64,000 bases of DNA from IMGVR_UViG_3300044796_000657:366230-430229, one strand, 5' to 3'. Positions 17,191 to 58,526 are shown, counted from the first letter of the stretch. The notes: generated by a model not told the origin, from the sequence alone. Numbers and translations are program-made.

Positions 17191-17258
17191 GGGTCTACTT
17201 GCGGGCAAGCTCTGGGTTTTGCAAATCCGGCAACGGGGTTCAACTCCCCGTAGATCCA
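17191..17258 (+). tRNA. atypical tRNA-Ala(UGC)-like, compact D-arm
   Basis: Acceptor gggtcta/tagatcc with G3:U70 and A73; loop tt-tgc-aa; T-arm cgggg-ttcaact-ccccg. Confidence 0.6.
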
Positions 17259-17272
17259 CTAGGAGAAGAAAA

Positions 17273-17467
17273 ATGTTTCACGTATTCAAATGCGACAATG
17301 GAACAGTGATTGCGGTTCATGTTAATAAGTATGGGGACATTAGTGTTTACGATAAGGTGAACCCTAAAGAACTCAAAGAGGTTGGAACATTTGAAGCAGA
17401 TGGTGTTTCAGATTTCAATCACGGCATGAGGCGGGCAATAGAAGTAGCAATGGATGAAGGGGCATAA
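17273..17467 (+). CDS. small hypothetical protein
   Basis: AGGAG SD then ATG 17273. Confidence 0.6.
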   Translation: MFHVFKCDNGTVIAVHVNKYGDISVYDKVNPKELKEVGTFEADGVSDFNHGMRRAIEVAMDEGA

Positions 17468-17472
17468 AACAT

Positions 17473-17545
17473 GCCTTCGTAACTCAACTGGCAGAGTAGC
17501 GGTCTTTTAAACCGAAGGTTGTGGGTTCGACTCCCACCGATGGCA
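17473..17545 (+). tRNA. tRNA-Lys(UUU)
   Basis: Cloverleaf, loop ct-ttt-aa. Confidence 0.9.
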
Positions 17546-17597
17546 CTAACATTCAATCGAAAGATTGAAGTTCTTTGACAACTTAGTTTTTATTTTT

Positions 17598-17665
17598 GAA
17601 CCATCCGGCGGATCGGCGCTAAGTTTGCGAAATTTGGATGGCAAGTTCGACTCTTGCATGGTTCA
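17598..17665 (+). tRNA. atypical tRNA-Arg(GCG)-like, compact D-arm
   Basis: Acceptor gaaccat/atggttc; loop tt-gcg-aa; T-arm gcaag-ttcgact-cttgc. Confidence 0.55.
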
Positions 17666-17811
17666 CTTTGACTAACTCTGTGAAGCGGAGCGGTAGCATA
17701 ACCCCTACCGGTTTAATGAGTGTAGGCTGTGGCAGGCGAAATAACGCTAAGGCCAATGACACTTAACCTTTATCGTGACATTAAGATGATGATAAAGTGA
17801 ATGTCGAACAT

Positions 17812-17884
17812 GCTCTCATAGCTCAACTGGAAGAGTACCTCGTTTCGACCGAGGCGGTTGTAAGTTCAACTCTTACTGAGAGTA
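17812..17884 (+). tRNA. tRNA-Arg(UCG)
   Basis: cctcg-tt-tcg-ac-cgagg. Confidence 0.9.
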
Positions 17885-17955
17885 CTAAGGCGACGACTGC
17901 CTTTCAAATGATAGAGCCTTCAACGGTTTAGTGCCTTTTGATAAATGTCGTAATT

Positions 17956-18028
17956 GATCCCGTCGCCAAGAGGCTCAAGGCATCGATCTGCAAAATCGAC
18001 ATCGTAGGTTCAAATCCTACCGGGGTCT
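17956..18028 (+). tRNA. tRNA-Cys(GCA)
   Basis: tcgat-ct-gca-aa-atcga; U73. Confidence 0.9.
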
Positions 18029-18055
18029 CTGTTAACTTTTCAACTAGGAATAACC

Positions 18056-18271
18056 ATGAACGACATTCAACTTCGAACATTAATCGGTCAAACTGTTGGC
18101 GATGCCGAACTTATTGTAATCGCTAATGGATTTACCCCTATGATTTTTGAAGTTAACGAAATCAGAATTAGTTTGGGTTATTCAGCCAATGTGGTAACAT
18201 TAGAACATCAAGACAACATTGTCGTCGGTGCGTACACACAAGCTACCATTGACAGCCAGTACAGGAAATAA
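18056..18271 (+). CDS. small hypothetical protein
   Basis: AGGA SD; ORF fills the gap between tRNAs. Confidence 0.6.
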   Translation: MNDIQLRTLIGQTVGDAELIVIANGFTPMIFEVNEIRISLGYSANVVTLEHQDNIVVGAYTQATIDSQYRK

Positions 18272-18277
18272 CATAAT

Positions 18278-18350
18278 GCCACCGTAGCTCAATTGGCAGA
18301 GCAAGTGTCTCTTAAACACGAGGTTGTGGGTTCGACTCCCGCCGATGGCA
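18278..18350 (+). tRNA. tRNA-Lys(CUU)
   Basis: gtgt-ct-ctt-aa-acac. Confidence 0.9.
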
Positions 18351-18370
18351 CTCAACACAAGAGGTTAACA

Positions 18371-19045
18371 ATGTGGGATTTAGAAACGATCAAAAGGATC
18401 AATAAAATCGCACTAGCAAAAGGTAGAAAATCTATGCTTCCTCAAGAAAACGTTTCGGTAGTTGACAAAATTTTGGCATCTACCGAAAAAGCAACCAAAG
18501 GTTATTCCAAGCAAGATAAGGCTTTGGTTTGCTTAATGGCTAAGAATGGATTCTTGAAAGCGTTTTTGGCAACTGCTTCGCTCAAAGAGAAAAGTCTTTG
18601 GCATAAGATTGTTTACAACCTTTTGATGAACGACGTTTATCCGTACATTGAAGAAATGGGCTTTGAAAGATTATACGCTGACACTATTCCCGATTTGATG
18701 AAAGATGATGTTCAAGACATCGCATTTTTGAGATTGCTCAAACTCATCAATGCACAACAAGCTCATCAAATGGTGCGGGATAGTTGGTATCTTGGCGACA
18801 GTCATCAGGCATTGTTCGCCTTGAAGTTAAACGACGATGCCGGTGATGATGAACTTTTGGAAATCATCAAAACCGTTATCGCAGGTAGCGGCAAAGTAGT
18901 CGCTGATTATTATGGTGGAAAAGCTGCTGCTGCTAATAGCTTGTTGGGTCAAACGATCAAGCGAGCAAAAGAAGCAGGCAAGAATACAGACCCGACAAAG
19001 ACCAAAGAGTTAATTGTTAAAACCTTAGATGAGACAAAACCATGA
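18371..19045 (+). CDS. GatB C-terminal/YqeY-like domain protein
   Basis: C-terminal VVADYYGGKAAAANSLLGQTIKRAKEAGKNTDP resembles the GatB tail; start moved past tRNA-Lys. Confidence 0.65.
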   Translation: MWDLETIKRINKIALAKGRKSMLPQENVSVVDKILASTEKATKGYSKQDKALVCLMAKNGFLKAFLATASLKEKSLWHKIVYNLLMNDVYPYIEEMGFERLYADTIPDLMKDDVQDIAFLRLLKLINAQQAHQMVRDSWYLGDSHQALFALKLNDDAGDDELLEIIKTVIAGSGKVVADYYGGKAAAANSLLGQTIKRAKEAGKNTDPTKTKELIVKTLDETKP

Positions 19046-19230
19046 TTTTAGTAGAACTAGATCCGAAAGTCACGCCGAAGTTAGGCGATGCGCAATCAAT
19101 GGGCAGTGTTCAATTGGTGGACATGAAAGATGGTACACACCAAGTAGTTGATCATCTTAAGCGATCTGAACAAAACCTTGCAGACGATCTTCGCAAATGT
19201 GGCGATGTTCGTACCGTCAAGGTAATATGA
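19042..19230 (+). CDS. small hypothetical protein
   Basis: ATGA overlap with the upstream gene. Confidence 0.55.
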   Translation: MILVELDPKVTPKLGDAQSMGSVQLVDMKDGTHQVVDHLKRSEQNLADDLRKCGDVRTVKVI

Positions 19231-19237
19231 AACAAAT

Positions 19238-19307
19238 AGGACGTATTGCGTGGGAGTAACATCGAACTCCAAATCCGAATGAGACGGTTCGAATCCGTCA
19301 CGTCCTA
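19238..19307 (+). tRNA. tRNA-Trp(CCA), shortened D-region
   Basis: aggacgt/acgtcct; loop ct-cca-aa; T-arm gacgg-ttcgaat-ccgtc. Confidence 0.7.
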
Positions 19308-19323
19308 CTTAGAAAAGAGGAAA

Positions 19324-24653: not shown

Positions 24654-24733
24654 GAATATAGGTCGTTTTAAGTCAGTTAAGACTCCGTCAATCGTCTGTT
24701 GCCGGAATAGAGGTTCAAATCCTCTCCTATTCA
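24654..24733 (+). ncRNA. tRNA-like RNA with extended anticodon arm
   Basis: T-arm agagg-ttcaaat-cctct; bulged acceptor gaata(ta)gg/cctattc; 13-nt anticodon region. Confidence 0.45.
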
Positions 24734-24832
24734 CAAACGCAATGGCCGAGGGGTCTAAGCCCCCCATAAACTAGGTAGCGATCCCTAAATTCTGGGACGA
24801 CTTGCTCCGAGTGCCTATGCTGATCAAATTGT

Positions 24833-26258: not shown

Positions 26259-26579
26259 GTGTGTATAATGGGTGAAATGTCGCCATTCGCCTCTCGTGGA
26301 AGGGGCTTAGTTAGACAGGGTGTTAAACCTATTTATAACTATGTGAGTGGCCCGTTCGCAACTTACATACAAGCGGACACGTATCGGCGAAATTGTTGTC
26401 ATATGGGGTTTGAGATAGTGACGTTGGATGCGGTGACGGGCGGCGGATTTCGTCCCCCGAACTATCCATCCTACGGTTTCTATATTGTTCACCATCTGAA
26501 TAAACATCCACAAACGCCACCACCCGAACCAGTTGTTAAATCAACTTTCAAAACCTACTTTCGTGAGGCAAAAAAATGA
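26259..26579 (+). CDS. hypothetical protein
   Basis: Its stop overlaps the ATG at 26576 (ATGA). Confidence 0.55.
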   Translation: MCIMGEMSPFASRGRGLVRQGVKPIYNYVSGPFATYIQADTYRRNCCHMGFEIVTLDAVTGGGFRPPNYPSYGFYIVHHLNKHPQTPPPEPVVKSTFKTYFREAKK

Positions 26580-27305
26580 CTATGGTGTTACTTTGGCTCT
26601 AAGAACCTTTGCGGTTTGCGTCCTACGGGTCGCCTTCATATCGGTCACTACTTCTCGGTAATCTTGCCGGGTCGTGATGGGGCTGAAGTCCTCATAGCCA
26701 ATTATCACGCTCCGCAAGAAACCAACTTGGAGGAGCTTGTTAAAGTTCTCAACAAATTCGGTGTAAACCAAATCAGAATGCAGCGTGATGTATTCAATGC
26801 CGAACTTTACTTCCGCCTTCTCTCAATTGCCGGTTTTGGCGATTTAGCCAGAATGCCGCAATTCAAATCGGCTGATGAAGACAAACAAACTGGTCAACTA
26901 CTCACCTATCCAGTCTTGATGACACACGATGTCGTCGGCTATGAGAACGTGTTGGTAGGTGAAGATCAGAAGGTGCATTTGGAATACGCTCGTAGGCTAA
27001 TTCGCAAATACAACAAAACCTTTAATGAAGAAGTTGTTTTGCCTCGTCCGATGATTGTTGGCGGGAAAGTTAAGGACTTGCGGAAGCCGACTGAAAAGAT
27101 GAGCAAGTCGTCACCTGATGGTTGTTTGTTCCTTGACGATACGCCCGACGATATTCGTACAAAATTGAAGGCAGCAACCACGACACCGGAAGGGATAGAG
27201 AACCTTTCTACATTGTACACTCATTTTGTTGGGCCTACAGTGCCTTCTATGAATTCTGAGCTTAAGTCTCAGTTGGCAGATGCTTTGATTGAGGCTTTTA
27301 AATAA
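26576..27305 (+). CDS. trpS: tryptophanyl-tRNA synthetase, shortened; probable +1 frameshift at 26591-26597
   Basis: GLRPTGRLHIGHY (HIGH), LTYPVLMTHDV, VGEDQKVHLE, KMSKS; no in-frame ATG before the Rossmann strand. Confidence 0.85.
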
Positions 27306-30358: not shown

Positions 30359-30361
30359 TAT

Positions 30362-30889: not shown

Positions 30890-30996
30890 CTGGTTGTAGT
30901 TTATCGACGGTTAAAATTACAATTAGGGAAAACGTGACTAATCCAAGTTATGTTGCCCATATAATTGAGAAACGGGTTCAAATCCCGTCAGCCAGA
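30890..30996 (+). ncRNA. tRNA-like RNA with long extended anticodon arm
   Basis: ctggttg/cagccag acceptor, D-loop GG, T-arm acggg-ttcaaat-cccgt, long irregular middle stem. Confidence 0.65.
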
Positions 30997-31836: not shown

Positions 31837-31837
31837 T

Positions 31838-33644: not shown

Positions 33645-33718
33645 GGGCCTATAGTTCAACCGGGGAGAACATCCAACAGGAATGTTGGAAGGTCGAGGTT
33701 CAAATCCTCATAAGCCCA
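33645..33718 (+). ncRNA. tRNA-like RNA with GGAA-capped 7-bp arm instead of a 7-nt anticodon loop
   Basis: gggccta/taagccc, D-arm gttc/gaac, tccaaca-ggaa-tgttgga, T-arm. Confidence 0.7.
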
Positions 33719-33722
33719 CTTT

Positions 33723-34550: not shown

Positions 34551-34837
34551 TTACTTGTCATGGCTGCGGGATACTGAAAGATCAAACTATTCTGGAAATC
34601 TATCCATATCCAGAAGAAGATAGTTTGTGTGATGAGCCAATAGAGCCGACACTTGAATTGGATTGTTGTCCTAATCCGGGCAGTACTGGTGATCGTGGTT
34701 GGAAGAAAGTAACGGTTTGTCACGAGTGTTTTCACAAGTTGCAACCTGATATGTGGATTAGTGAACAGTGTTGGGAGAAGATTAACCCAACAACATTATT
34801 TGATCAGTTGCCACCATTGTACGGGACTTTAGCATAA
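34547..34837 (+). CDS. Cys-rich hypothetical protein
   Basis: CHGC, CHEC; ends GTLA inside a tRNA-derived repeat. Confidence 0.6.
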   Translation: MITCHGCGILKDQTILEIYPYPEEDSLCDEPIEPTLELDCCPNPGSTGDRGWKKVTVCHECFHKLQPDMWISEQCWEKINPTTLFDQLPPLYGTLA

Positions 34838-35165
34838 CGGCAGTGTTCAATTTCTTTATCAACTTTGAAAGTTAATGTGATTTATGGCTCGTCCTCCTGA
34901 ATTTGATAAACACGCAGAATTAATTACTGATTACATTCGTAAGATGGGACTTTACGGGGTAACGCAAGAAATTCGCTTTGCTTTAACTGCTATTTTTGTC
35001 AACGATATTAATGATGATGAATTGTTTCATAAAGTAATGAAAGCATTGGAATCTTTCCAAGACGAATTAGGTAAAATTCAAGAAGATCGTATGAGTAATA
35101 GGAAAAAAGATCAACCTATTTATCCAATTGGGACAGTTATCGGGACTTTAGCATAACGGCAGTGT
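34822..35165 (+). repeat. 25-bp direct repeat of a tRNA 5' end (34822-34846 and 35141-35165)
   Basis: cgggactttagcataacggcagtgt occurs twice. Confidence 0.9.
34884..35156 (+). CDS. hypothetical protein between the repeats
   Basis: Ends GTLA in the second repeat. Confidence 0.6.
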   Translation: MARPPEFDKHAELITDYIRKMGLYGVTQEIRFALTAIFVNDINDDELFHKVMKALESFQDELGKIQEDRMSNRKKDQPIYPIGTVIGTLA

Positions 35166-35223
35166 GTTCCGGTAAGACCTACGTGGTTCCGGAATGGTAA
35201 GAGTTCGACTCTCTTAAGTTCCA
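35142..35223 (+). ncRNA. tRNA-like RNA with enlarged anticodon region
   Basis: gggactt/aagttcc, D-arm, ttccgg-16 nt-ccggaa, T-arm aagag-ttcgact-ctctt. Confidence 0.7.
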
Positions 35224-35244
35224 CTAGAACGAATAGATACATCT

Positions 35245-37540: not shown

Positions 37541-38056
37541 ATGCCTAAGATCAGCGACCAAGTAGTTCAGGGTAATAGCCCTGAAGAATTTGACTGCTCA
37601 ACATTGAATCATTCGGTGTTTCCAGTTAACATGCGATTGTTTAATGTCAGTCCATTCTATCGCCAGATCATTATGGACTGTATCCAATACATGGAGAGTC
37701 ACCTTAACATGCACTTTGATGATTACCACAATCACCGTGGAATCAGTGGTGCTGAGTTAGGCTTACCTTGGAATATCATCGCTTACAAACACGGCCAAGT
37801 TAAAAAATATTGTATCAACCCAAAAATCATTAACGTCTCAAAAGACGGCGTAGAAACCGAAACCAAGTGTGGTGCTTTGAAACTCGATAAGGCCGTTAAG
37901 GTTTTTCGGCATTCATTCATTGACTTGGAATATTACGATCTTAAGGGTGGTCATATTGTTGAACGGAATATTGGTCGTACTGAAGGCGGATTTACAATTC
38001 AGCACGAAATCGATCACAACAACGGCATCAGTATCCTCGACAGGGAGATAAAGTAA
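37541..38056 (+). CDS. def: divergent peptide deformylase
   Basis: GISGAELG, INPKI, ETKCGAL, IQHEIDHNNGI; motifs 1 and 2 degenerate. Confidence 0.75.
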   Translation: MPKISDQVVQGNSPEEFDCSTLNHSVFPVNMRLFNVSPFYRQIIMDCIQYMESHLNMHFDDYHNHRGISGAELGLPWNIIAYKHGQVKKYCINPKIINVSKDGVETETKCGALKLDKAVKVFRHSFIDLEYYDLKGGHIVERNIGRTEGGFTIQHEIDHNNGISILDREIK

Positions 38057-39912: not shown

Positions 39913-40086
39913 ATGCCTAAAAAAGATGATGTCTGCCATTGCCCGTGTCATTCTTCGCCGACAACGATTATCCACATAATGGCTTGTTGTTACAAATGCC
40001 CCAAGTGTGGTCAAAATATTAAGAACGAGTGTTATGATGAACATGTCAAAAAATGCGGAAAAGAAAAACCGGCTGATCGACATTGA
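39913..40086 (+). CDS. small Cys/His-rich metal-binding protein
   Basis: CHCPCH, CCYKCPKC. Confidence 0.5.
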   Translation: MPKKDDVCHCPCHSSPTTIIHIMACCYKCPKCGQNIKNECYDEHVKKCGKEKPADRH

Positions 40087-40381
40087 TGGTACGGTGTGTG
40101 AAGACATCGCAAATGAAAACTCTCATTTGTATCCAACTGCCAAACTTTGGCCCGGTTCGGTTCAGAAAATCAACTTTTTTTATGATCAAGGCGATTTCAT
40201 TGTGTTCTTTACGGCACGTGAAGAAAAGGATAGAAAAGTTACTGAAGATTGGTTACAATCCAATGGCTTCAAGTATCACGCCCTAATAACTGGAAAGCCC
40301 AGAGGCGGCAATTACCAGTGGATAGACAATCTCAAAGGGGAGTTTGTTCTATTTGAGGGCGATTGGGAGAAAATCCTGTGA
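40043..40381 (+). CDS. HAD-superfamily phosphatase-like protein
   Basis: LIDIDGTV, FFTAR, GKPR, WIDN; start approximate. Confidence 0.75.
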   Translation: MSKNAEKKNRLIDIDGTVCEDIANENSHLYPTAKLWPGSVQKINFFYDQGDFIVFFTAREEKDRKVTEDWLQSNGFKYHALITGKPRGGNYQWIDNLKGEFVLFEGDWEKIL

Positions 40382-43598: not shown

Positions 43599-44099
43599 AT
43601 GACTCTTCTCGCAGACCTTAGAACAAAACTTGTAGTGGCCTTAAAAGCCAAAAAAGAAACTGAAAAATCGATCATTCGTATCGTTTTGGGTGAAGTGGCG
43701 ACACATCAAGGCCGTACTGGAAAAGAACCGTCAGATGATGATGTCAAGCGTATTATCAAAAAATTGATTCAAAGTAATCAAGAAACAATGAATTTTTATG
43801 AAGATGAAATAGGTGGGTGTTTAGACGCCCAACGCAAATGGGACACCCTTGCCGAAGAAAACTTGATTTTATTAAGTATTGTCCCACCTGCTAGGAAGTT
43901 GGATGCTAACGGCATTTACAACACTGCTTTGCTTGCTGGCGAACCGATATTTAACAACCTCAAAGATGCCAAATCGGAAGGTCAGGCAATTGGGCTTTGT
44001 TTTAAATATCTTAAGAGTTATAATTGGGAGTCTGAACCCGATGATGTATTACAGGCAGTTAAAAGGATTCGCTCTGAAGGACATATCCTCAGCATTTAA
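43599..44099 (+). CDS. GatB/YqeY domain protein
   Basis: LRTKLVVALKAKKETEKSIIRIVLGEV..DDDVKRIIKKLI. Confidence 0.75.
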   Translation: MTLLADLRTKLVVALKAKKETEKSIIRIVLGEVATHQGRTGKEPSDDDVKRIIKKLIQSNQETMNFYEDEIGGCLDAQRKWDTLAEENLILLSIVPPARKLDANGIYNTALLAGEPIFNNLKDAKSEGQAIGLCFKYLKSYNWESEPDDVLQAVKRIRSEGHILSI

Positions 44100-47000: not shown

Positions 47001-49838
47001 ATGAATCTTGACCCTAACACTCGTGAACAAGAAGTTCTCAAATTGTGGAAGGGTCAAGATACGTTTCAGGCGATTCAATTTCGTCGGAAATCGGCTAAGC
47101 CTTTTGTGATGTTTGAAGGCCCGCCAACCGCCAATGGCAAACCCGGCATCCATCACGTTCTCACCCGCACATTTAAAGATGCAATCGCACGCTTCCAAAC
47201 CATGAAAGGCCGTTACGTTGAACGACGGGCCGGATGGGATGAACACGGATTGCCAGTAGAATTAGAAGTCCAAAAAGCCTACGGACTCCCCACCAAAGAA
47301 TCCATTCTCGATTACGGTGTTGCTGAATTTAATAACAACTGCCAAGTCAGCACCCGCAACTTCATCGCCGATTGGGAAAAATTAACCCACCGAATGGGTT
47401 ATTGGCTCGATTTTGAAAACGCCTATAACACATCAGATCCTAGTTATATCAACAAAGTTTGGACAGTCTTAGATAATCTCATGGCTAATGATGAGATTTA
47501 TCAAGACTATAAAATCGTGCCTTGGGCTTGCGATTCCCAAACCGTCTTATCCAATTCAGAATTAGAACAAGGTTATAAAGAGGTTGAACACAATACGATG
47601 ACGGTTAAATTCCGCATCGATGATGACACCAATACCTATCTGATCGCATGGACAACTACCCCTTGGACATTGCCAGCTAATATGGCTTTAGCAGTCAATC
47701 CTTCGTTAACATATTACGAAACCATTGACTCAGAGGGGTGCCATTGCATTAGCCTCAAAAAAACCGAACCCTCATTACCAATCAGTGGCCACAAACTTGT
47801 CGGCCTAAAATATCGTCACCCATTTATCTCTGGTAAGGTCTGTCAAGTCTATGGCGACAACTTCGTTAGAGGCGATACAGGAACCGGAATTGTACATATC
47901 GCACCTGCTTTTGGCATTGATGATTACGCTCTTTGGAAAAAGAGTATGGCCCTTGAGCCAATCATCTGTCACGTAAATCCGGATGGTTCTTTCAACGCAG
48001 CAGCTCCAGACTTGCTGCGAGGCATCAATTTGTTGGACAGAAATTTCAAAACTGTTAACTCTTTAATTCATGCCCACTTGACTTCGGCAGGAGCAAACTA
48101 CGAAAATCAATCCTTCAAGGATTCGGGATTTACACATCAATACCCGCACAATTGGCGAACGGGTAAGCCTCTTATCTATATGTTTAGACATAGTTGGTTC
48201 GTGAAAACAACCGGCCTCAAACTTCGTCAAGTTAACAAAGAAGAAGTGACTTGGTATCCTAGTAATATCAAAGAAGGTAGATTTGGACAATGGCTTGATG
48301 GTGGCAAAGATTGGGCAATTTCCCGTGAACGATTTTGGGGTACACCGTTGCCCTTTTATCGTGATGCTGACAATAACGTCTCTTTCCAAGTCCCTCAATA
48401 TTATCACAAGCCGGGTTCTGATACGCCCATCGTCAAAGATAGAGTAATCTGGAAACGAACCTCAGAAGTTTTGGACTGCTGGTTCGATAGTGGCGCAATG
48501 CCGTTTGCCGCTTATGAGAAGTTCCAGCCAGCCGATGTAATTTGTGAGGGCATCGATCAAACCCGTGGGTGGTTCTATTCGTTAATGGTTATTGGTGTTG
48601 CTCTCACAGAACATACGCCATTCAAGGCAGCGATTTGCCTCGGCCATGTTCTGGATAAGAACGGCGTGAAAATGAGCAAGTCCAAAAAGAATGCTGTTGA
48701 TCCTTGGGAAGTTTTTGAGCGAGAAGGCGCTGATGCCGTTCGTTGGTACATGCTCAAAACACCAATCGGACAATCTCTTTTGTGGAATGAAGCCGAAGTT
48801 AAAAAAGTCAATCAAACATTCTTCAATCGCTTGCTTAGCTCTCTTGACTTTTACGAGCAACAACAAAACCCCGACAAGCCTCATCGATCTAGTAATGGGT
48901 CAAAAGATGCTACGGATATTTGGATGATGGCACGCCTACACAGTGTTGTTAACAGCGTATCCCAATATTTGGAAGATTATGAATTTGCCAAAGCGATTGA
49001 AGCCATTGAGCTTTTTACCAACGATCTTTCTAATGTTTGGATTAGAACAAATCGATCACGATTCCTTGCTGATGGTGCCCATGTTCCTAACGGTATTTTG
49101 AAAAACTGCCTAAAAACACTAACATTGTTAATTGCACCGTTGGCGCCGATGTTGGCTGAACATGTCTGGTATCGTTTGTGTCCAGAAAACATTGTTTATG
49201 GAAGCATGGGTTCGGTACATGCTACCGATTGGCCTAAACCAGAAGATAATACGTGGGACGCATTCTCAAAAAATATTGTTATTCTTGAAGCCATGAAAGA
49301 AGCTCGTCAAGTTATCACTGAAGGCTTGAAACAGAGAGACAAGCGGAATATCCGTTTGAGGCAACCGATCAAAGCAGTGCGGGTGCCTCGTAACATCAAT
49401 CCACAACTCATTCAATTCGTCAAGACGGAGTTGAATGTTAAAGACATCATCGTTGATGCTAAGGGGGAATCCGTGGAAATGGATTTCAACCTTACGGATG
49501 AACTTGTAGCGGAAGGTATGGCAAGAGATTTGATGCGGGCTATTCAAGTTCGCCGCAAAGATTTAGGTTTGAAGCGTGGTGAACCAATTCGTATCGTATT
49601 GGAAGTCGATAAAAAGACCAGATCCATGCTTGAACCACATATGAGTGAGTTGATGTTAAGTGTGACTTGTGGTGATCTGCGATACAAAGAAGTCGCAGAT
49701 ACAGCATCGCCGATTGTAATGGAAGTCACAAAAATGGAACCGGCTAACCCAGATGGCTATAAGGAATTCGGAAAAGCCACAACAAAACTGACTTCTGCTG
49801 AAATCGCCAAAGTGATATTGACAAATCGTGTCGGTTAA
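47001..49838 (+). CDS. ileS: isoleucyl-tRNA synthetase (type 2-like)
   Basis: FEGPPTANGKPGIHH, GWDEHGLP, WTTTPWTL, GTGIVH, DWAISRERFWG, EGIDQTRGWF, KMSKS. Confidence 0.93.
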   Translation: MNLDPNTREQEVLKLWKGQDTFQAIQFRRKSAKPFVMFEGPPTANGKPGIHHVLTRTFKDAIARFQTMKGRYVERRAGWDEHGLPVELEVQKAYGLPTKESILDYGVAEFNNNCQVSTRNFIADWEKLTHRMGYWLDFENAYNTSDPSYINKVWTVLDNLMANDEIYQDYKIVPWACDSQTVLSNSELEQGYKEVEHNTMTVKFRIDDDTNTYLIAWTTTPWTLPANMALAVNPSLTYYETIDSEGCHCISLKKTEPSLPISGHKLVGLKYRHPFISGKVCQVYGDNFVRGDTGTGIVHIAPAFGIDDYALWKKSMALEPIICHVNPDGSFNAAAPDLLRGINLLDRNFKTVNSLIHAHLTSAGANYENQSFKDSGFTHQYPHNWRTGKPLIYMFRHSWFVKTTGLKLRQVNKEEVTWYPSNIKEGRFGQWLDGGKDWAISRERFWGTPLPFYRDADNNVSFQVPQYYHKPGSDTPIVKDRVIWKRTSEVLDCWFDSGAMPFAAYEKFQPADVICEGIDQTRGWFYSLMVIGVALTEHTPFKAAICLGHVLDKNGVKMSKSKKNAVDPWEVFEREGADAVRWYMLKTPIGQSLLWNEAEVKKVNQTFFNRLLSSLDFYEQQQNPDKPHRSSNGSKDATDIWMMARLHSVVNSVSQYLEDYEFAKAIEAIELFTNDLSNVWIRTNRSRFLADGAHVPNGILKNCLKTLTLLIAPLAPMLAEHVWYRLCPENIVYGSMGSVHATDWPKPEDNTWDAFSKNIVILEAMKEARQVITEGLKQRDKRNIRLRQPIKAVRVPRNINPQLIQFVKTELNVKDIIVDAKGESVEMDFNLTDELVAEGMARDLMRAIQVRRKDLGLKRGEPIRIVLEVDKKTRSMLEPHMSELMLSVTCGDLRYKEVADTASPIVMEVTKMEPANPDGYKEFGKATTKLTSAEIAKVILTNRVG

Positions 49839-49876: not shown

Positions 49877-51313
49877 ATGAAAAAGGCAGAATTAGTAGAA
49901 GCAGGCATTCCCGTGAATTGCCATGCTGCTGCCATTAAGGTCATTCAAGATGGCTTCCGGCACAAAATCTTCCCTTCCAACAAAGGGGCACGGGAAGCTT
50001 TAACGAGAGTGGCCGCTGCGCCTGAAATGCACCTCGGCGCAGACGACTTCTACCGAGAATTGGCAAGCACCATCATTGCCACCCGCAAACAGCACGTTGA
50101 AGACGAAGCTCTTTACGCCAAAAACAGCATTGGTACAAGCCAATCGTTTGCCTCTTGGGGTGCCGACATTGAACAAGGTGCCATTGATCAAATGCAAAAT
50201 GCGGTATCCCTGCCAGTTTCAGTGGTCGGCGCCATGATGCCCGATGCCCACAGTGGGTACGGTTTGCCCGTAGGCGGTGTTCTGGCCACATACGACAGCA
50301 TCGTTCCTTATGCGGTAGGCGTCGATATTGGTTGCCGGATGCGTTTTACGTTCACCGATATCGATCCATCACTCCTCAAGGATTCTCACGACAAGAAGGC
50401 GACTCCGCTCTGTAAAGCCTTGCGTGAAGGAACGGTTTTTGGCGTCGGCGGTCAACACGAAATTAAGATGAACCATCCAGTCATGGACAAGGATTGGAAC
50501 ATCACGGCTGTCACAAAAGCCGCCAAAGATAAGGCATGGCGGCAGTTGGGAACCAGCGGTTCCGGCAATCACTTCGCCGAATGGGGCATTGTGACGTTAA
50601 CTCAAAAAGAATTCGGTTTAGAGCCGGGGAAATACGTCGCTCTCATGACTCACAGCGGCTCCCGTGGTTCGGGTTCTGATGTTTGTAGTTACTATACCGA
50701 CGTTGCCGCTTCCAAGCTGCCAAAGGCTTATGAGAAATTCGGCAAAATGAAATTGGCGTGGTTGCCAATGGCTTCCGAAGCTGGCCAAGAGTATTGGGCA
50801 GCTATGAACCTTATGGGTGATTATGCCGCTGCCAATCACTACGTCATTCACGAATTGGTTCTCAAGAATATGGGAGCAACGGCCCTTAAAGTGATTGAGA
50901 ACCACCACAATTTCGCATGGAAAGAAGATTACAAGGGAACCGAAGTGTACGTTCACCGTAAAGGTGCTACACCTGCCGGAAAGGGCGTACTGGGTATTAT
51001 CCCCGGTAGTATGGCCACTTCCGCATTCGTCGTACGAGGCAAGGGCAATCCTGAAAGCTTGATGTCGGCTTCTCACGGTGCCGGGCGGGCAATGAGCCGC
51101 ACCAAAGCTAAGGAACAGTTTAACTGGAGCACATGGAAGAGCCAAATCCAAAATGCCGGTGTACGACTATTGAGCGGCGGGATTGATGAGGTTCCCGGTG
51201 CTTACAAAGACATTCACAAAGTCATGGCTCAACAAACCGACTTGATTGATGTTGTGGCAGAATTCATGCCCAAAATCGTCCTCATGGGTCAAGATGGTCG
51301 GAGCGAAGATTAA
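49877..51313 (+). CDS. rtcB: RtcB RNA ligase
   Basis: PDAHSGYGLPVGG, GVDIGC, GSGNHF, HSGSRG, HHNFA, HRKGAT, PGSM, SASHGAGR, DEVPGAYK. Confidence 0.95.
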   Translation: MKKAELVEAGIPVNCHAAAIKVIQDGFRHKIFPSNKGAREALTRVAAAPEMHLGADDFYRELASTIIATRKQHVEDEALYAKNSIGTSQSFASWGADIEQGAIDQMQNAVSLPVSVVGAMMPDAHSGYGLPVGGVLATYDSIVPYAVGVDIGCRMRFTFTDIDPSLLKDSHDKKATPLCKALREGTVFGVGGQHEIKMNHPVMDKDWNITAVTKAAKDKAWRQLGTSGSGNHFAEWGIVTLTQKEFGLEPGKYVALMTHSGSRGSGSDVCSYYTDVAASKLPKAYEKFGKMKLAWLPMASEAGQEYWAAMNLMGDYAAANHYVIHELVLKNMGATALKVIENHHNFAWKEDYKGTEVYVHRKGATPAGKGVLGIIPGSMATSAFVVRGKGNPESLMSASHGAGRAMSRTKAKEQFNWSTWKSQIQNAGVRLLSGGIDEVPGAYKDIHKVMAQQTDLIDVVAEFMPKIVLMGQDGRSED

Positions 51314-52749: not shown

Positions 52750-54741
52750 ATGAACAGTCAATTTGGTTTTGTCTGCGTTGGAGCAGGTTCGTCACGTGTT
52801 TCAGTCGGCAACCCCGTCTATAACGCCGATGAAACCATTGCTCTGATACGCAGAATGAAAGATTGTGATATTGTGGTTCTCCAAGAGTTGGGGATCACTG
52901 GCTACACTTGTCGCAATCTTTTCAGTCAAGAGCTTCTTATTAACTCTGCTGCACAGCAGGTTCAACGTGTCGCCGAAGCAACCAATTGGGTCAAAAATGG
53001 GATTCCCCCTCAATTGGTCTTTGTAGGCTGTCCCATATACGTTAACAACAATCTGTACAATTGCGCCGTAGCGATCCAAGACGGCGAAGTGATCGGTATC
53101 GTCCCGAAGCAGCACCTTCCCAATTACAAGGAATTTGAAGAAACTCGTTGGTTTCAACCCGGTTCTTCTAAGTTGCCACAATCCATTAAGTGGCAAGGCG
53201 AAACCGTCCCATTTGGCACTGATCTCCTATTTGACTTCGGCAACAATGTTGTCGTCGGTGTGGAAATTTGTGAAGATTTGTGGATGCCTATTCCGCCTAG
53301 TTCCCATCAGGCACAAGCGGGCGCAACCATTTTAGTTAACCTTTCGGCGTCCAATGAAACGGTTGCCAAAGCAGACTACCGTCGTGATTTGGTAGTTGGA
53401 CAATCTGGCCGATGTATTGCCGCATACGTTTATTCGTCTGCCGGGCCTTCCGAATCGACAACAGACTTGATTTTCGGCGGTCACTGTATGATTGCCGAAA
53501 ATGGGAGCCTCTTGAAACAGTCCAAGAGAGTTGGCGATGGATCAAAGCTGTCGTTCAATTCGCACTTCATCATGGGTGATGTTGATGTGCAAAAGATTAT
53601 GTTTGAGAGACGGCAAACTACAAGCTATGGCCAAGAAGTCAGGTTGAACTACCGCAGAATTAACGTTCGCTCACGACAAAAAACCAAAACATTACATCGC
53701 ACCATTGACAGTATGCCATTTGTTCCCAAAGACTCTGGTAAACTCAATGAACGATGTACGGAAATTTTCGCCTATCAAGTGGCCGGTCTTGCTTGTCGTC
53801 TCAACAGAATAGGACGCTACAATCCTGTGATCGGTGTTTCGGGTGGTTTAGACTCCACTTTGGCGTTGCTTGTGTTAGCGAAAACGTTCGAAGCTCTTGG
53901 TATTGATCCCGGCAAGATCCAAGGAATCACGATGCCCGGTTTCGGTACCACCAGCCGGACGCTTGACAACGCTAAAAAGCTGATGGATCAATTGAAAATC
54001 AGCCAAACGACCATTGACGTTTGTCATTTGAGTTTGGAAACATTCCGTCAGATGGGACACAAACCTTTCGGACTTTCGCCTTATCTGGAAATGGATAAAT
54101 TTAAAGAAGCACTCAAAGGTTTAAAGAAACAAGATCGTCATGATCTTGTTTTTGAGAACGTTCAAGCGAGAGTGCGAACCCACTTCCTAATGAATCAGGG
54201 CTTCGTCGTTGGCACTGGCGACTTAACCGAAGCAGCGTTGGGTTGGTGCACGTTCAATGCTGACCATATGAGTATGTACAACCCCAATTGCTCTGTACCA
54301 AAGACATTGGTCAAGTTCCTAGTCAAATGGGCCGCTGAAAACGAATTCGACGGCAAAACACAAAAAACCCTGCTCGATATTGTTGATACGGAAATTTCGC
54401 CCGAATTGTTGCCGGTGGACAATGAGGGGAAAGCTCAATCTACCCAAGATACGTTGGGGGCTTTTGAGTTACATGACTTTTTCCTATTCAACATTATTCG
54501 GAATGGATTTTCACCGGATAAAGTGTTATTCTTAGCGGAATATGCCTTTGACGGTGCTTACAAAAAAGAAGTTATTCACAAGACGTTGAAGTTATTTTAT
54601 GAAAAATTCTTCCGCAATCAGTTCAAACGAAATTGCGTTCCCGATGGTGTTAAAGTTGGATCTGTGAGTTTGTCGCCCCGTGGTGATTGGCGAATGTCTT
54701 CCGACTCCGATCCCACTCTTTGGCTTAAGGAGCTACAGTAA
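52750..54741 (+). CDS. nadE: glutamine-dependent NAD+ synthetase
   Basis: Nitrilase-like domain (QELGITGY, PKQHLPNY, EICEDLW), GVSGGLDSTL, ENVQARVR, GTGDLTE. Confidence 0.95.
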   Translation: MNSQFGFVCVGAGSSRVSVGNPVYNADETIALIRRMKDCDIVVLQELGITGYTCRNLFSQELLINSAAQQVQRVAEATNWVKNGIPPQLVFVGCPIYVNNNLYNCAVAIQDGEVIGIVPKQHLPNYKEFEETRWFQPGSSKLPQSIKWQGETVPFGTDLLFDFGNNVVVGVEICEDLWMPIPPSSHQAQAGATILVNLSASNETVAKADYRRDLVVGQSGRCIAAYVYSSAGPSESTTDLIFGGHCMIAENGSLLKQSKRVGDGSKLSFNSHFIMGDVDVQKIMFERRQTTSYGQEVRLNYRRINVRSRQKTKTLHRTIDSMPFVPKDSGKLNERCTEIFAYQVAGLACRLNRIGRYNPVIGVSGGLDSTLALLVLAKTFEALGIDPGKIQGITMPGFGTTSRTLDNAKKLMDQLKISQTTIDVCHLSLETFRQMGHKPFGLSPYLEMDKFKEALKGLKKQDRHDLVFENVQARVRTHFLMNQGFVVGTGDLTEAALGWCTFNADHMSMYNPNCSVPKTLVKFLVKWAAENEFDGKTQKTLLDIVDTEISPELLPVDNEGKAQSTQDTLGAFELHDFFLFNIIRNGFSPDKVLFLAEYAFDGAYKKEVIHKTLKLFYEKFFRNQFKRNCVPDGVKVGSVSLSPRGDWRMSSDSDPTLWLKELQ

Positions 54742-56928: not shown

Positions 56929-56957
56929 CTGTTTTCCCCTTTTATCGGAGTATGATT

Positions 56958-57248
56958 ATGAATCTTGAACTTTGCGCCTCGTTCGCCGAAGCTGTGTTTC
57001 CCGCCGACGCTGTCGCCCGTGAGAACCTTTTCGAAAACGCCAAGTTGGGCCGCTTCAAAGACTTCGATGAAGCCATCATGCAGCAAGCTGTGGACTTCTA
57101 TGCTGAAGGCGTCAGATCGGGTGGTGTTAAGTTCCCCACTCTGTTCTGCCAAGATGTTCAGGCCGCTCTCCCAACCCACGACAAACAGAACTTCAAGATC
57201 CTTGCGCACGTCGCCCAATGCGAATGCTGCCAGCAAAAAGTCAGCTAA
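56958..57248 (+). CDS. hypothetical protein
   Basis: GGAG SD; GC-richer codon usage. Confidence 0.6.
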   Translation: MNLELCASFAEAVFPADAVARENLFENAKLGRFKDFDEAIMQQAVDFYAEGVRSGGVKFPTLFCQDVQAALPTHDKQNFKILAHVAQCECCQQKVS

Positions 57249-57252
57249 GTAG

Positions 57253-57381
57253 GTATCCGGTGTGAGCATGGGACTCACTCCTGTAGGTATTACTGGACTT
57301 GGGATAGACCCAAGCTGCTCGAAAGGCGGAAGACCGGTGCAACTCCGGAAATGACAAAAGGTTCGATTCCTTTCGGATGCT
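57253..57381 (+). ncRNA. tRNA-like RNA with multi-hairpin insert replacing the anticodon arm
   Basis: gtatccg/cggatgc, gtgag/ctcac D-like arm, three internal hairpins, T-arm aaagg-ttcgatt-ccttt. Confidence 0.6.
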
Positions 57382-57385
57382 ACTT

Positions 57386-57691
57386 ATGAAACCTCGCATC
57401 ATGTATGTTGAAAACAAAGCGACCGGCGAAGCTCATATCGGAAGAGTGAGCTTTTCTAAAACCGGTCGCACGGTTTACTACAACAGCAAAAGCCTATCCA
57501 ATCTTGGCGGAAGAGGCTTTAAAGCCAATCACTACGACATTGACACACACGAAGAGTATTGGGTGTCCGGGCCTCACAAAGATGGCAATGACAAACTGTA
57601 CGGTGGACAGAAGGGCGTTGTAATAGACGCCGACGTTTGGGACGAGTATTGGATAGAGATAAGGGGATTGAAAGAGATTCCCAAACGTTAA
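57386..57691 (+). CDS. conserved-looking hypothetical protein
   Basis: RIMYVENK..GRVSFSKTGRTVYY..YWVSGP. Confidence 0.65.
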   Translation: MKPRIMYVENKATGEAHIGRVSFSKTGRTVYYNSKSLSNLGGRGFKANHYDIDTHEEYWVSGPHKDGNDKLYGGQKGVVIDADVWDEYWIEIRGLKEIPKR

Positions 57692-57700
57692 TATGTTTGA

Positions 57701-57774
57701 GTCGGGGTAGCCCAACGGCAGGAGGCGACACACTCAAAATGTGTACAGTGTGGGTTCGAATCCCACCCTCGATA
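57701..57774 (+). tRNA. tRNA-Leu(CAA) with short variable loop
   Basis: acaca-ct-caa-aa-tgtgt. Confidence 0.82.
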
Positions 57775-57880
57775 TTATGAAGAAGTTTATTAAATACACT
57801 TGTAATGTTGCTCGCAATGCGGTTTGTCTTTATTTTCGTCCGATCACGGCAACAATTCAATTTGTCAAAAAGAAGTTAAG

Positions 57881-58063
57881 ATGAAACCAACAGATAAAGA
57901 ACATGAATGTTTTACCAAATTAGATAATGGATCAATACCGGCGGGTAGAGATGTTGATGTTTATCGTATTGACGACAAAACAATTTTTGTCAGCTTCCCA
58001 AATGGTGGGCATATTAGGATTGTAAGCGAAACACCAATTAAGACATTTTGCAAACCTGAATAA
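57881..58063 (+). CDS. small hypothetical protein
   Basis: ORF. Confidence 0.5.
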   Translation: MKPTDKEHECFTKLDNGSIPAGRDVDVYRIDDKTIFVSFPNGGHIRIVSETPIKTFCKPE

Positions 58064-58220
58064 CAAAAGAAGTTAAAATGATTACCGCAATGGTTATTTG
58101 TTTTGTTTGTATGGTTATTGGAGCGGCTACTGATAGCGATTTGGCAACGCTGGCTTTCATTATTTTTATGATTTTATTGGGCATAAAAATAATTAGTTTT
58201 ATTAATTCTTAATATAATTT

Positions 58221-58296
58221 GGTCTCGTAACATAGTCTGGTCTAATGTGCCGATCTTATAAGTCGGATATCGAAAGTTCAAATCTTTCCGAGACTA
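58221..58296 (+). tRNA. tRNA-Ile(UAU)
   Basis: ccgat-ct-tat-aa-gtcgg; A73. Confidence 0.88.
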
Positions 58297-58297
58297 C

Positions 58298-58369
58298 TGT
58301 CGTTTAGCTGAGTGGTAAAGCGTCTGTACGACATGCAGAAGATCATCGGTTCAATTCCGGTAACGACAA
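58298..58369 (+). tRNA. tRNA-Val(GAC), C33
   Basis: tctgt-ac-gac-at-gcaga. Confidence 0.8.
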
Positions 58370-58373
58370 CTTT

Positions 58374-58445
58374 GGCTCGTTAGTATAACGGATAGTGCGG
58401 TTGTTTCCTAAACGACAAGCAGAGGTTCGACTCCTCTACGGGCTA
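58374..58445 (+). tRNA. tRNA-Arg(CCU)
   Basis: gttgt-tt-cct-aa-acgac. Confidence 0.88.
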
Positions 58446-58450
58446 CTTAT

Positions 58451-58526
58451 GCCTTCGTAATGGCCCCGGTTTCTACCCGGAAGGTGCATAACTGGAATTA
58501 TACAGGTTCGACTCCTGTCGAGGGTG
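58451..58526 (+). tRNA. D-armless tRNA-Arg(UCU)-like with long variable arm
   Basis: gccttcg/cgagggt; 7-nt linker; ccgg-tt-tct-ac-ccgg; T-arm acagg-ttcgact-cctgt. Confidence 0.6.

What the first reader, a model, noticed from the sequence alone, without database searches (positions are those of the whole stretch)
17191..58526. Candidate system: non-canonical tRNA-like RNAs with anticodon-domain-reduced synthetases and RtcB
Seen: five RNAs keep acceptor, D and T arms but have rebuilt anticodon arms (24654, 30890, 33645, 35142, 57253). Four or five others have shrunken or missing D-arms. The same region encodes a GlyRS-like core without an anticodon-binding domain, a C-terminally trimmed TrpRS, two GatB/YqeY-like tRNA-binding domains, an EF-Tu domain-II-like protein, RtcB and a HAD phosphatase. 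In several aberrant arms the stems remain paired. Inference: options are intron-like inserts removed and sealed by RtcB, decoys for host anticodon nucleases or tRNA-sensing defences, or aminoacyl donors for non-ribosomal reactions charged through acceptor-only recognition.
Basis: inference. Interest (0 to 1): 0.82.

Follow-up and report, generated by a model that had tools for sequence, protein, structure and literature searches.

The report
Sealed-anticodon tRNA mimics in huge phage
A peat-soil giant phage carries, among about 37 working tRNA genes, six tRNA look-alikes whose anticodon loop is replaced by a closed hairpin so they cannot read codons, and a shortened TrpRS gene beside them appears to be switched on by a ribosomal frameshift at a tryptophan codon.

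Summary
The RNAs are real. A strict T-arm plus 7/7-acceptor scan finds 29 elements on the + strand against 0.18 expected by chance. Six of them (24654, 30890, 33645, 35142, 57253, 58451) keep acceptor and T arms, and usually the D arm. Their anticodon loop is replaced by a longer closed helix, so they cannot decode. Four others (17191, 17598, 19238, 36971) keep a 7-nt anticodon loop on an atypical D arm.

One sealed RNA (24654) has an ortholog in a related phage, with compensatory changes. Similar capped arms occur in other huge phages.

The "system" reading is not supported. RNA-library contigs show the elements unspliced. The insert positions are not intron-like. The minimal TrpRS and GlyRS-like families are large and also occur in small phages without tRNA arrays. 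No EF-Tu domain-II-like protein was found.

Best reading: this is a translation-support island. The sealed RNAs are non-decoding tRNA-derived modules, most likely RNase P/Z processing or stability signals. Decoy, aminoacyl-carrier and pseudogene readings remain open.

New finding: in seven genomes the minimal TrpRS can only be made through a +1 frameshift in a short leader containing an invariant CUU-UGG-C. This resembles prfB, with the Trp codon as sensor.

The parts
17191..17259 (+). tRNA-Ala(UGC)-like gene with a 3-bp D stem, a 6-bp anticodon stem, a normal 7-nt loop, G3:U70 and A73
   Evidence: ARAGORN at lowered threshold. Fold z -2.5. Weak Rfam mascRNA-type hit.
17598..17666 (+). tRNA-Arg(GCG) with a 3-bp D stem and a 6-bp anticodon stem
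   Evidence: no Rfam tRNA hit
19238..19308 (+). atypical tRNA-Trp(CCA), the likely substrate of the phage TrpRS
   Evidence: ARAGORN; Rfam 26.6 bits, below threshold
24654..24734 (+). sealed-anticodon tRNA mimic 'b': a 9-pair helix (24684-24706) capped by CGUCU, an acceptor stem with a bulge, sited directly after tRNA-Gly
   Evidence: Ortholog at L035:325-405 with 2 compensatory and 2 one-sided changes and an identical loop.
30890..30996 (+). sealed-anticodon tRNA mimic 'c': anticodon arm replaced by an approximately 18-pair hairpin with an AAUCCA loop
   Evidence: Rfam tRNA 32.4 bits with 50 nt in place of the arm. Arm fold z -4.74, 0 of 200 shuffles.
33645..33719 (+). sealed-anticodon tRNA mimic 'd': 7-bp stem plus a GGAA (GNRA) tetraloop at 33672-33689, heading the Thr tRNA cluster
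34822..34846 (+). orphan copy of the first 25 nt of element 'e' (a tRNA 5' fragment). Together with 35141-35165 it brackets ORF 34884-35156.
   Evidence: perfect 25-nt direct repeat
35142..35224 (+). sealed-anticodon tRNA mimic 'e': 6 bp + bulge + 4 bp + UACGU loop at 35167-35194; acceptor stem has G3:U70 and A73
   Evidence: Rfam tRNA 45.7 bits with 18 nt in place of the 7-nt loop
36971..37038 (+). tRNA-Met(CAU) with a 3-bp D stem and a 6-bp anticodon stem
57253..57381 (+). 129-nt composite tRNA-like RNA 'f': acceptor, D and T arms, a closed arm with a GGUAU loop, and three extra hairpins, one of which resembles a second T arm
   Evidence: 18-nt identity to the T arm of a tRNA-Thr in L017/L021. 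No Rfam family.
58451..58526 (+). D-armless tRNA-like 'k' with either a long closed hairpin or a 4-bp stem with a UCU loop
   Evidence: weak fold, z -0.8
26576..26602 (+). leader ORF MTMVLLWL-stop of the TrpRS gene; proposed +1 frameshift site CUU-UGG-C at 26591-26597
26580..27305 (+). minimal TrpRS: HIGH and KMSKS motifs present, about 65 C-terminal residues of the anticodon-binding region absent, no in-frame start codon
27585..28310 (+). 241-aa class II GlyRS-like catalytic core without an anticodon-binding domain
18371..19045 (+). stand-alone GatB/YqeY-type tRNA-binding domain protein
43599..44099 (+). second YqeY-like protein
40007..40381 (+). HAD-family phosphatase-like protein
   Evidence: E 2e-7
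47001..49838 (+). full-length IleRS with its anticodon-binding domain
49877..51313 (+). RtcB RNA ligase
37541..38056 (+). peptide deformylase

Best explanation
The stretch is the translation-support island of a huge phage (at least 430 kb) from peat. It carries ordinary tRNA genes and four decoding tRNAs with an atypical D arm. It also carries six tRNA-derived genes whose acceptor stem, T arm and (in five of them) D arm are intact. In those six the 7-nt anticodon loop has become a longer, closed helix capped by a tetra-, penta- or hexaloop. Shown: these RNAs cannot present an anticodon. They sit tightly between same-strand ORFs. One of them is conserved with compensatory changes. Inferred: they are kept as non-decoding tRNA-shaped modules. 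They retain the part of a tRNA that RNase P, RNase Z and the CCA-adding enzyme recognise. This would let them cut and stabilise the interleaved tRNA/ORF transcripts, like plant-mitochondrial t-elements or the stable RNAs of the T4 tRNA cluster. Sealing the loop would keep them out of decoding. The neighbouring proteins are independent, widely spread phage genes. RtcB would repair tRNAs cut by host nucleases. The minimal TrpRS, the GlyRS-like enzyme and IleRS would keep tRNAs charged. The TrpRS is made only after a +1 frameshift sensed at a Trp codon.
For: Tests against chance. tRNA-model matches with replaced anticodon arms. Closed, stable arms: (arm of 30890, z -4.74). The elements are packed against ORF ends: 30890 starts at the base after a stop codon, 35142 overlaps the end of an ORF, and 57253 abuts the next start codon. 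Ortholog of 24654 in L035: identical T arm and loop, covarying helix, while the other intergenic DNA does not align. Capped arms recur elsewhere: a UUCG-capped element in L022, four tandem 6-nt-loop tRNAs in L043, and insert-bearing tRNA-likes in L022, L024, L029 and L056. Independence of the protein genes. RtcB as a phage tRNA-repair ligase: PMC7824862.
Against: No cleavage at these elements has been shown. The RNA-library contigs run straight through three of them, and may in part be DNA carry-over. Only one element has an ortholog, and with two sequences the covariation is not statistically strong: 122 of 500 shuffles reach the observed values. The acceptor stem of 24654 is bulged in both phages, which is odd for an RNase P substrate. 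A pure processing signal would not need the D arm or a long anticodon helix. 57253 looks like a recombinant of two tRNAs, and a bare 25-nt tRNA fragment lies at 34822, so some debris is certainly present.
Confidence: 0.38

Rival explanations
1. Most of the aberrant elements are recently inactivated tRNA genes. They were hit by insertions, duplications or recombination in a fast-turning tRNA array and are on their way to loss.
For: Each anticodon arm is altered in a different way, with no shared motif. A 25-nt tRNA fragment and a direct repeat bracket an ORFan at 34822/35141. 57253 contains a second T-arm-like hairpin identical over 18 nt to a tRNA-Thr arm of other phages. 58451 and 21444 fold no better than shuffles. 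No orthologs were found for 30890, 33645, 35142 or 57253.
Against: All other arms are intact in six elements at once. The inserts extend the helix rather than disrupt it (z -4.7 for 30890). One arm has a GNRA cap. 24654 is conserved, with compensatory changes, at about 70% nucleotide identity between the two genomes. Similar capped arms recur in unrelated huge phages. The absence of orthologs reflects the absence of close relatives in the collections, not a negative test.
Confidence: 0.25
2. The sealed tRNA mimics are decoys or sponges. They would bind host tRNA-targeting defence nucleases or other tRNA-shape readers without being cut or entering translation.
For: The L-shape determinants (G18G19-type D loop, canonical T loop, acceptor helix) are kept in 30890, 33645, 35142 and 57253, while the usual cleavage site is removed. 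Phage tRNAs are known to counter anticodon nucleases, PARIS and retron effectors (PMC10264068, PMC11464382 and PMC11555353, listed). RtcB in the same island points to pressure from tRNA cleavage.
Against: Known anticodon nucleases recognise the anticodon loop, which these RNAs lack. No defence or target protein is identified. Nothing here shows abundance or binding.
Confidence: 0.17
3. Some sealed mimics are charged through acceptor-stem identity alone and carry amino acids for a non-ribosomal reaction or for regulation.
For: 35142 (and the decoding 17191) carry G1-C72, G2-C71, G3:U70 and A73, the AlaRS identity set, which does not need the anticodon (tRNA identity rules are established knowledge). 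Synthetases without anticodon-binding domains and free GatB/YqeY tRNA-binding domains are encoded nearby.
Against: No aminoacyl-tRNA-dependent transferase was found in the window. The TrpRS is regulated by a Trp codon, which fits ordinary translation. The minimal synthetase families occur without such RNAs. 24654 has a bulged acceptor stem.
Confidence: 0.08
4. The extra nucleotides are small introns that are cut out and sealed by RtcB to give normal tRNAs.
For: ARAGORN in intron mode can derive Met(CAU), Leu(AAG) and Thr(GGU) from 30890, 35142 and 57253. RtcB is the ligase for such ends.
Against: The predicted insertion points differ (35/36, 36/37, 37/38), and the derived anticodon AAG sits in a class I body. 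No splicing endonuclease gene or self-cleaving ribozyme family was found. The RNA-library contigs carry only the unspliced forms and no joints. In 24654 the tip loop is conserved and the helix covaries, as expected for a mature structure.
Confidence: 0.05

Closest known systems
t-elements and tRNA punctuation in plant and animal mitochondria; stable 'species 1/2' RNAs of the phage T4 tRNA cluster (from my own knowledge)
   Same: tRNA-derived structures that keep the acceptor/T-arm half, lie between genes in polycistronic transcripts, and do not decode.
   Different: Here the D arm and a long, closed anticodon helix are also kept. Cleavage by RNase P/Z is not shown. T4 species RNAs have no assigned function.
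Phage tRNAs that evade anticodon nucleases, PARIS or retron effectors (PMC10264068, PMC11464382, PMC11555353)
   Same: Phage-encoded tRNA variants altered in the anticodon arm, encoded together with RNA repair enzymes.
   Different: The known cases keep a 7-nt loop and still decode. The six elements here have no anticodon loop at all.
Naturally non-canonical tRNAs (PMC7609411), such as tRNAPyl, tRNASec and mitochondrial D-armless tRNAs
   Same: 17191, 17598 and 36971 have a short D arm and a 6-bp anticodon stem, as tRNAPyl and tRNASec have a 6-bp anticodon stem.
   Different: They have ordinary T loops and ordinary anticodons (Ala, Arg, Met). No dedicated synthetase is evident.
prfB (RF2) CUU-UGA-C and yeast Ty1 CUU-AGG-C programmed +1 frameshifts
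   Same: A short ORF0, the slippery codon CUU followed by a slowly decoded codon and then C, an SD-like GGUG 3 nt upstream, and a sensor codon tied to the gene's own function.
   Different: The sensor is the Trp sense codon in a TrpRS gene, at the very start of the gene in phages. Frameshifting is inferred from seven genomes and has not been measured.
Stand-alone or truncated synthetase paralogs and huge-phage translation genes (PMC9437257, PMC7824862)
   Same: Phage-encoded aaRS, tRNA-binding domains, Pdf and RtcB clustered with tRNAs.
   Different: The 230-250-aa TrpRS and GlyRS-like cores form very large metagenomic families that are also present in small phages.

Membership tests
tRNA (Rfam RF00005) | Score at or above the gathering threshold (29 bits), with acceptor, D and T arms | tested here: met
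   33645 at 46.9, 35142 at 45.7 and 30890 at 32.4 bits. Not met for 24654 (15.4 bits), 57253 (no hit), 17191 and 58451.
tRNA (Rfam RF00005) | 5-bp anticodon stem with a 7-nt loop (U33, purine 37) | tested here: not met
   The loops of 24654, 30890, 33645, 35142, 57253 and 58451 are replaced by closed helices with 4- to 6-nt caps.
Intron-bearing pre-tRNA spliced by an endonuclease plus RtcB | Insert at a fixed position (37/38), with a bulge-helix-bulge motif or a ribozyme | tested here: not met
   Positions are 35/36, 36/37 and 37/38, plus a 2-nt 'intron'. There are no ribozyme or group I hits.
Intron-bearing pre-tRNA spliced by an endonuclease plus RtcB | Spliced joints in RNA | tested here: inconclusive
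   No joints, and unspliced contigs across 30890, 33645 and 35142. However, the data are assembled contigs of one metatranscriptome, which cannot show short mature tRNAs.
RtcB RNA ligase (PF01139) | Full-length match to the family profile | tested here: met
   303.8 bits, profile positions 1-425 of 426.
Tryptophanyl-tRNA synthetase (class Ic) | Rossmann core with HIGH and KMSKS motifs | tested here: met
   RLHIGHY and KMSKS are present. TIGR00233 92 bits; PDB TrpRS E 1e-20.
Tryptophanyl-tRNA synthetase (class Ic) | C-terminal helical anticodon-binding region and full length (about 330 aa); score above the equivalog cut-off | tested here: not met
   241 aa. The alignment ends near residue 263 of the 388-residue PDB chain 3prh_A that was printed (native bacterial TrpRS chains in the same table are 326-335 residues, aligned to about residue 227-229). 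92 bits against a cut-off of 176.75.
Glycyl-tRNA synthetase (alpha2 type) | Class II catalytic core most similar to GlyRS | tested here: met
   PRK04173 E 1e-13 and PDB GlyRS E 7e-6 over residues 76-238.
Glycyl-tRNA synthetase (alpha2 type) | Anticodon-binding domain; score above the equivalog cut-off; glycine activation | tested here: not met
   241 aa, 50.7 bits against a cut-off of 312, no C-terminal domain. Activity is not testable here. The gene lies next to tRNA-Gly genes in L012 and L014.
prfB-type programmed +1 frameshift | No start codon in the main frame; an ATG with SD in the frame that needs a +1 shift; a short ORF0 ending in a stop | tested here: met
   Seen in seven genomes (window, L035, L124, L125, L126, L127, L180).
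prfB-type programmed +1 frameshift | Conserved slippery site CUU-N with a slow A-site codon and an upstream SD-like element | tested here: met
   GGTG-NNN-CTTTGGCTCT is invariant, including three synonymous positions, while downstream third positions vary.
prfB-type programmed +1 frameshift | Shifted protein product and response to Trp-tRNA charging | not testable with these tools
   Needs a reporter assay or mass spectrometry.
t-element-like processing signals | tRNA-like acceptor/T-arm structure at the borders of mRNAs | tested here: met
   The elements abut ORF stops and starts on the same strand.
t-element-like processing signals | Cleavage by RNase P and RNase Z in vivo | not testable with these tools
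   The contig data give no ends at the elements.
Bacterial Y RNA (YrlA) tRNA mimics | Rsr/Ro60 gene nearby; RNA ends lie in the stem that replaces the anticodon arm | tested here: not met
   No Ro-like protein in the ORFs scanned. The RNA ends lie in the acceptor stem. No Rfam hit.

The most novel reading that the evidence does not exclude
Sealed-anticodon tRNA mimics are a conserved, so far undescribed class of huge-phage RNAs. They keep the tRNA body but cap the anticodon arm with stable tetra- or pentaloops. They act in trans, either as decoys for tRNA-shape-reading host defences or as AlaRS-chargeable carriers (35142 has G3:U70), rather than as passive processing signals.
Probability: 0.2. 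Interest if true: 0.8.

Novelty: new variant of a known kind. Interest (0 to 1): 0.62.

Why it matters
Phage tRNA arrays are usually read as codon supplements or as spare parts against anticodon nucleases. A recurrent set of tRNA bodies that have been made unable to decode, at least one of them under selection, points to a further use of the tRNA shape by viruses. It also gives concrete RNAs to test.

The TrpRS leader would be a second natural bacterial-type case, after prfB, in which a gene senses its own product through a +1 frameshift. Here the signal would be the supply of charged tRNA-Trp. It also explains why gene callers truncate hundreds of these genes. The size of the minimal TrpRS and GlyRS-like families in phages of all sizes suggests a general counter to host attacks on charging, for example HipT/HipA2 kinases that inactivate TrpS (PMC8262856).

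Tried and rejected
- **Close relatives for covariation.** IMG/VR scans with four proteins returned only the source contig, or relatives at 44-62% aa identity (GlyRS-like) and 42-64% (RtcB), without the RNAs. The ORF next to 30890 is an ORFan. blastn of the elements against all loci and against cultured phages found nothing beyond 24654 in L035. Pattern scans for the 24654 type in IMG/VR gave only self or unrelated coding hits. The genome-contig scan gave one distant hit.
- **Known RNA families.** 57253 and the others match no Rfam family other than tRNA. The similarity of 57253 to a cobalamin-riboswitch stem, and the YrlA idea, were dropped.
- **57253 as a homolog of the 138-nt element in L029.** Only hairpin-level resemblance was seen, so this is not claimed.
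- **TGA read-through fusion of ORF 26259-26579 with TrpRS.** Rejected because the upstream ORFs are not homologous between genomes, and L124 and L180 have other arrangements.
- **Stop-codon recoding.** Rejected because long ORFs are intact under code 11.
- **Body-similarity assignment of the mimics to amino-acid families.** Weak: the best matches are Ala-type for 33645 and 35142.
- **EF-Tu domain-II-like protein.** Not found.

Full report
**Source and context**

The window is part of IMGVR_UViG_3300044796_000657, a 430-kb viral contig. One protein look-up reports the same gene on a 614-kb contig. A peat metagenome run holds the stretch in full. No cultured phage is similar at the DNA level. 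From about 17 kb to 58.5 kb nearly all genes are on the + strand, and tRNA genes alternate with small ORFs.

**Are the RNAs there?**

- ARAGORN finds 33 tRNAs and Rfam finds 25.
- A strict form of the scan required a 5-bp T stem ending in G, a TTYRANN loop, and a 7/7 acceptor stem at 60-139 nt. It gave 29 hits on the + strand, one on the - strand (a true tRNA-Val), and 0.18 per window in 100 dinucleotide shuffles.
- With lax filters the Rfam tRNA model matches 30890 (32.4 bits), 35142 (45.7 bits) and 33645 (46.9 bits) end to end. The anticodon part is replaced by 50, 18 and 8 nt respectively.
- 24654 scores 15.4 bits and 57253 gets no tRNA match.

**Anatomy of the anticodon arms**

The minimum-energy folds give cloverleaf-like shapes. 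In every case the anticodon arm is a closed helix.

| Element | Anticodon arm |
|---|---|
| 24654 | nine pairs with one mismatch, capped by CGUCU |
| 30890 | about 18 pairs with an AAUCCA loop (arm alone z -4.74; 0 of 200 shuffles fold as well) |
| 33645 | 7 bp with a GGAA tetraloop |
| 35142 | 6 bp, a 3-nt bulge, 4 bp, and a UACGU loop |
| 57253 | seven pairs with a GGUAU loop, followed by three more hairpins before the T arm |
| 58451 | no D arm; either a 10-pair hairpin or a 4-bp stem with a UCU loop (weak fold, z -0.8) |

- None of the six can present a normal anticodon.
- 30890, 33645, 35142 and 57253 keep a GG-containing D loop and a canonical T loop.
- 35142 has G1-C72, G2-C71, G3:U70 and A73, the alanine identity set. 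So does 17191, which is otherwise a decoding tRNA-Ala(UGC).
- 17191, 17598 (Arg) and 36971 (Met) share a 3-bp D stem and a 6-bp anticodon stem with a normal loop. 19238 (Trp) is atypical.

**Selection or decay?**

- The only close relative recovered is L035, a 5-kb contig. Its GlyRS-like protein is 74% identical and its TrpRS-like protein 71% identical.
- L035 carries an ortholog of 24654 directly after a tRNA, as in the window.
- The T arm is identical apart from one loop base, and the cap CGUCU is identical. The nine-pair helix shows two compensatory and two one-sided changes. Pairing falls from 89% to about 45% when the partners are slid.
- Apart from genes and tRNAs, this is the only intergenic match between the two contigs.
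- With two sequences the shuffle control is not significant (122 of 500), so this is supportive rather than proof.
- Other huge-phage loci fetched here carry comparable elements:
  - a tRNA-like in L022 whose arm reads CCUU-UUCG-AAGG;
  - four tandem tRNAs in L043 with 6-bp stems and TTAAGT/TTAAAT loops;
  - 97- to 138-nt insert-bearing tRNA-likes in L022, L024, L029 and L056.
- Signs of debris also exist:
  - a perfect 25-nt copy of the 5' end of 35142 lies 319 nt upstream, and the two copies bracket an ORFan;
  - 57253 contains a T-arm-like hairpin identical over 18 nt to the T arm of a tRNA-Thr in L017/L021, which suggests a recombinant origin.

**Introns and RtcB**

- ARAGORN can model "introns", but at different positions in each element.
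- No ribozyme, group I intron or splicing endonuclease was detected.
- A peat metatranscriptome run holds 79% of the sampled words of window 30300-36200. Its contigs cross 30890, 33645 and 35142 unspliced, and no joints are reported.
- These are assembled contigs and DNA carry-over cannot be excluded. They cannot show mature small RNAs, so the result is only mildly negative.

**The proteins**

Confirmed:

- two GatB/YqeY-type proteins;
- a 241-aa TrpRS with HIGH and KMSKS but without the last ~65 residues;
- a 241-aa class II core closest to GlyRS;
- RtcB;
- a HAD-like protein;
- peptide deformylase;
- a complete IleRS.

No EF-Tu domain-II-like protein was found among about 70 ORFs.

- The GlyRS-like family has 1523 hits and the minimal TrpRS family 4729 hits at E below 1e-5.
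- Members of both families lie in ordinary-size phages with no tRNA array. One sits between the small and large terminase genes (L115). Another is in a phage with integrase, portal and capsid genes (L127).
- GlyRS-like genes also lie on megabase, GC-rich contigs.
- In L012 and L014 the GlyRS-like gene sits beside tRNA-Gly genes.
- L119 keeps several of the island's proteins with only two or three tRNAs.
- The proteins and the sealed RNAs are therefore not inherited as one unit.
- RtcB in jumbo phages is already read as a ligase for cleaved tRNAs (PMC7824862).

**The TrpRS frameshift**

- Homology between the window and its relatives starts right after an in-frame stop at 26577-26579. There is no start codon in that frame before the HIGH motif.
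- In the window and in L035, L124, L125, L126, L127 and L180, an ATG with a Shine-Dalgarno sequence opens a 6- to 8-codon ORF ending in a stop. The leaders read MTMVLLWL, MTTVYLWL, MVCLWL, MTQVYLWL, MTPVCLWL, MSTVRLWL and MMVCLWL.
- This ORF lies in the frame from which a +1 shift reaches the TrpRS body.
- GGTG-NNN-CTTTGGCTCT is invariant in all seven, including three synonymous positions of the TrpRS frame. Downstream third positions vary freely.
- CUU-UGG-C has the same form as prfB CUU-UGA-C and Ty1 CUU-AGG-C (my own knowledge). GGUG lies 3 nt upstream, where prfB has its SD-like element.
- I infer that a ribosome waiting for Trp-tRNA at UGG slips from CUU to UUU and then makes TrpRS. When Trp-tRNA is plentiful it reads on to the stop.
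- The exact slip site is inferred. A shift nearer the ATG cannot be excluded, because the residues LWCY in the TrpRS frame resemble the N-termini of homologs that have normal starts.
- No paper in the library describes this.
- The arrangement argues that the enzyme charges tRNA-Trp for translation.
- Host HipT and HipA2 toxins inactivate TrpS (PMC8262856). This offers one reason for phages to carry their own TrpRS; this is inference.

**Verdict**

The proposed system does not hold. The sealed-anticodon tRNA mimics are unusual and probably functional, and I favour a processing or stability role over the rivals with modest confidence. The TrpRS leader is the most clearly supported new feature.

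Noticed in passing
window 26576-26602 (also L035:2432, L124:~512, L125:~9872, L126:~6320, L127:~6900, L180:~907): The minimal TrpRS genes have no in-frame start. A short leader ORF with an invariant GGTG-NNN-CTT-TGG-CTC-TRA requires a +1 frameshift, probably at CUU-UGG-C with the Trp codon as sensor.
   Followed up: yes
L115:5224-5967, L116, L127:6971-7645, L026-L114 set: The 240-aa GlyRS-like and TrpRS cores are very large metagenomic families. They are also found in small phages (between terS and terL, or beside integrase/portal genes). The GlyRS-like core is also found on GC-rich contigs of 1-2 Mb.
   Followed up: partly
window 34822-34846 and 35141-35165: A perfect 25-nt direct repeat (the 5' part of tRNA-like 35142) brackets the ORFan 34884-35156. 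This is a trace of recombination or insertion at a tRNA gene.
   Followed up: partly
L043:14455-14842: Five tandem tRNA genes on an 859-kb contig. Four have 6-bp anticodon stems and the conserved odd loops TTAAGT/TTAAAT, with covarying stems between paralogs.
   Followed up: partly
L056:633-759 and 850-985: Two different tRNA genes each carry a 55- to 60-nt insert in the anticodon region. The inserts share a hairpin with the loop CCATTT(T)GAACYACRGTTCCG, which may be a small mobile or functional insert. The motif is absent from the window.
   Followed up: partly
L021:4452-4922: A GOLLD RNA (165 bits) sits inside the tRNA array of an RtcB-encoding phage contig.
   Followed up: no
L017, L018, L019, L021 tRNA arrays; window 57332-57348: Many tRNAs of these phages have T loops that read TGCRANT (G instead of T at position 54). 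The same type of hairpin is embedded in element 57253.
   Followed up: partly
window 21527-21600 and 58221-58297: tRNA-Glu(UUC) has a non-canonical T loop (AUCGUCA) and gets no Rfam hit. A tRNA-Ile with anticodon UAU is present. L119:8720-8790 has a UAU-loop tRNA-like with an aberrant D region.
   Followed up: no
L035:4640-4900: A consensus promoter, followed by a ~230-nt non-coding stretch with a T-arm-like hairpin, ending in a terminator-like T run. This may be an unclassified small RNA in the closest relative.
   Followed up: no
L039:9611: An amber-suppressor-type tRNA (anticodon CUA) lies about 390 nt upstream of a GlyRS-like gene in another phage contig.
   Followed up: no
window 22191-22772, 31273-31836, 44496-45863, 52750-54741: The island also encodes an ADP-ribosyltransferase (ART-PolyVal), a cytidylyltransferase-like (NMNAT-type) protein, glutamate dehydrogenase and a glutamine-dependent NAD synthetase.
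   Followed up: no
window 30300-30570 and 35260-35746: The RNA-library contigs leave gaps over tRNA-His and the two tRNA-Ser genes, yet cover tRNA-Tyr, the Thr cluster and the sealed mimics. The cause is unknown, and filtering cannot be excluded.
   Followed up: no
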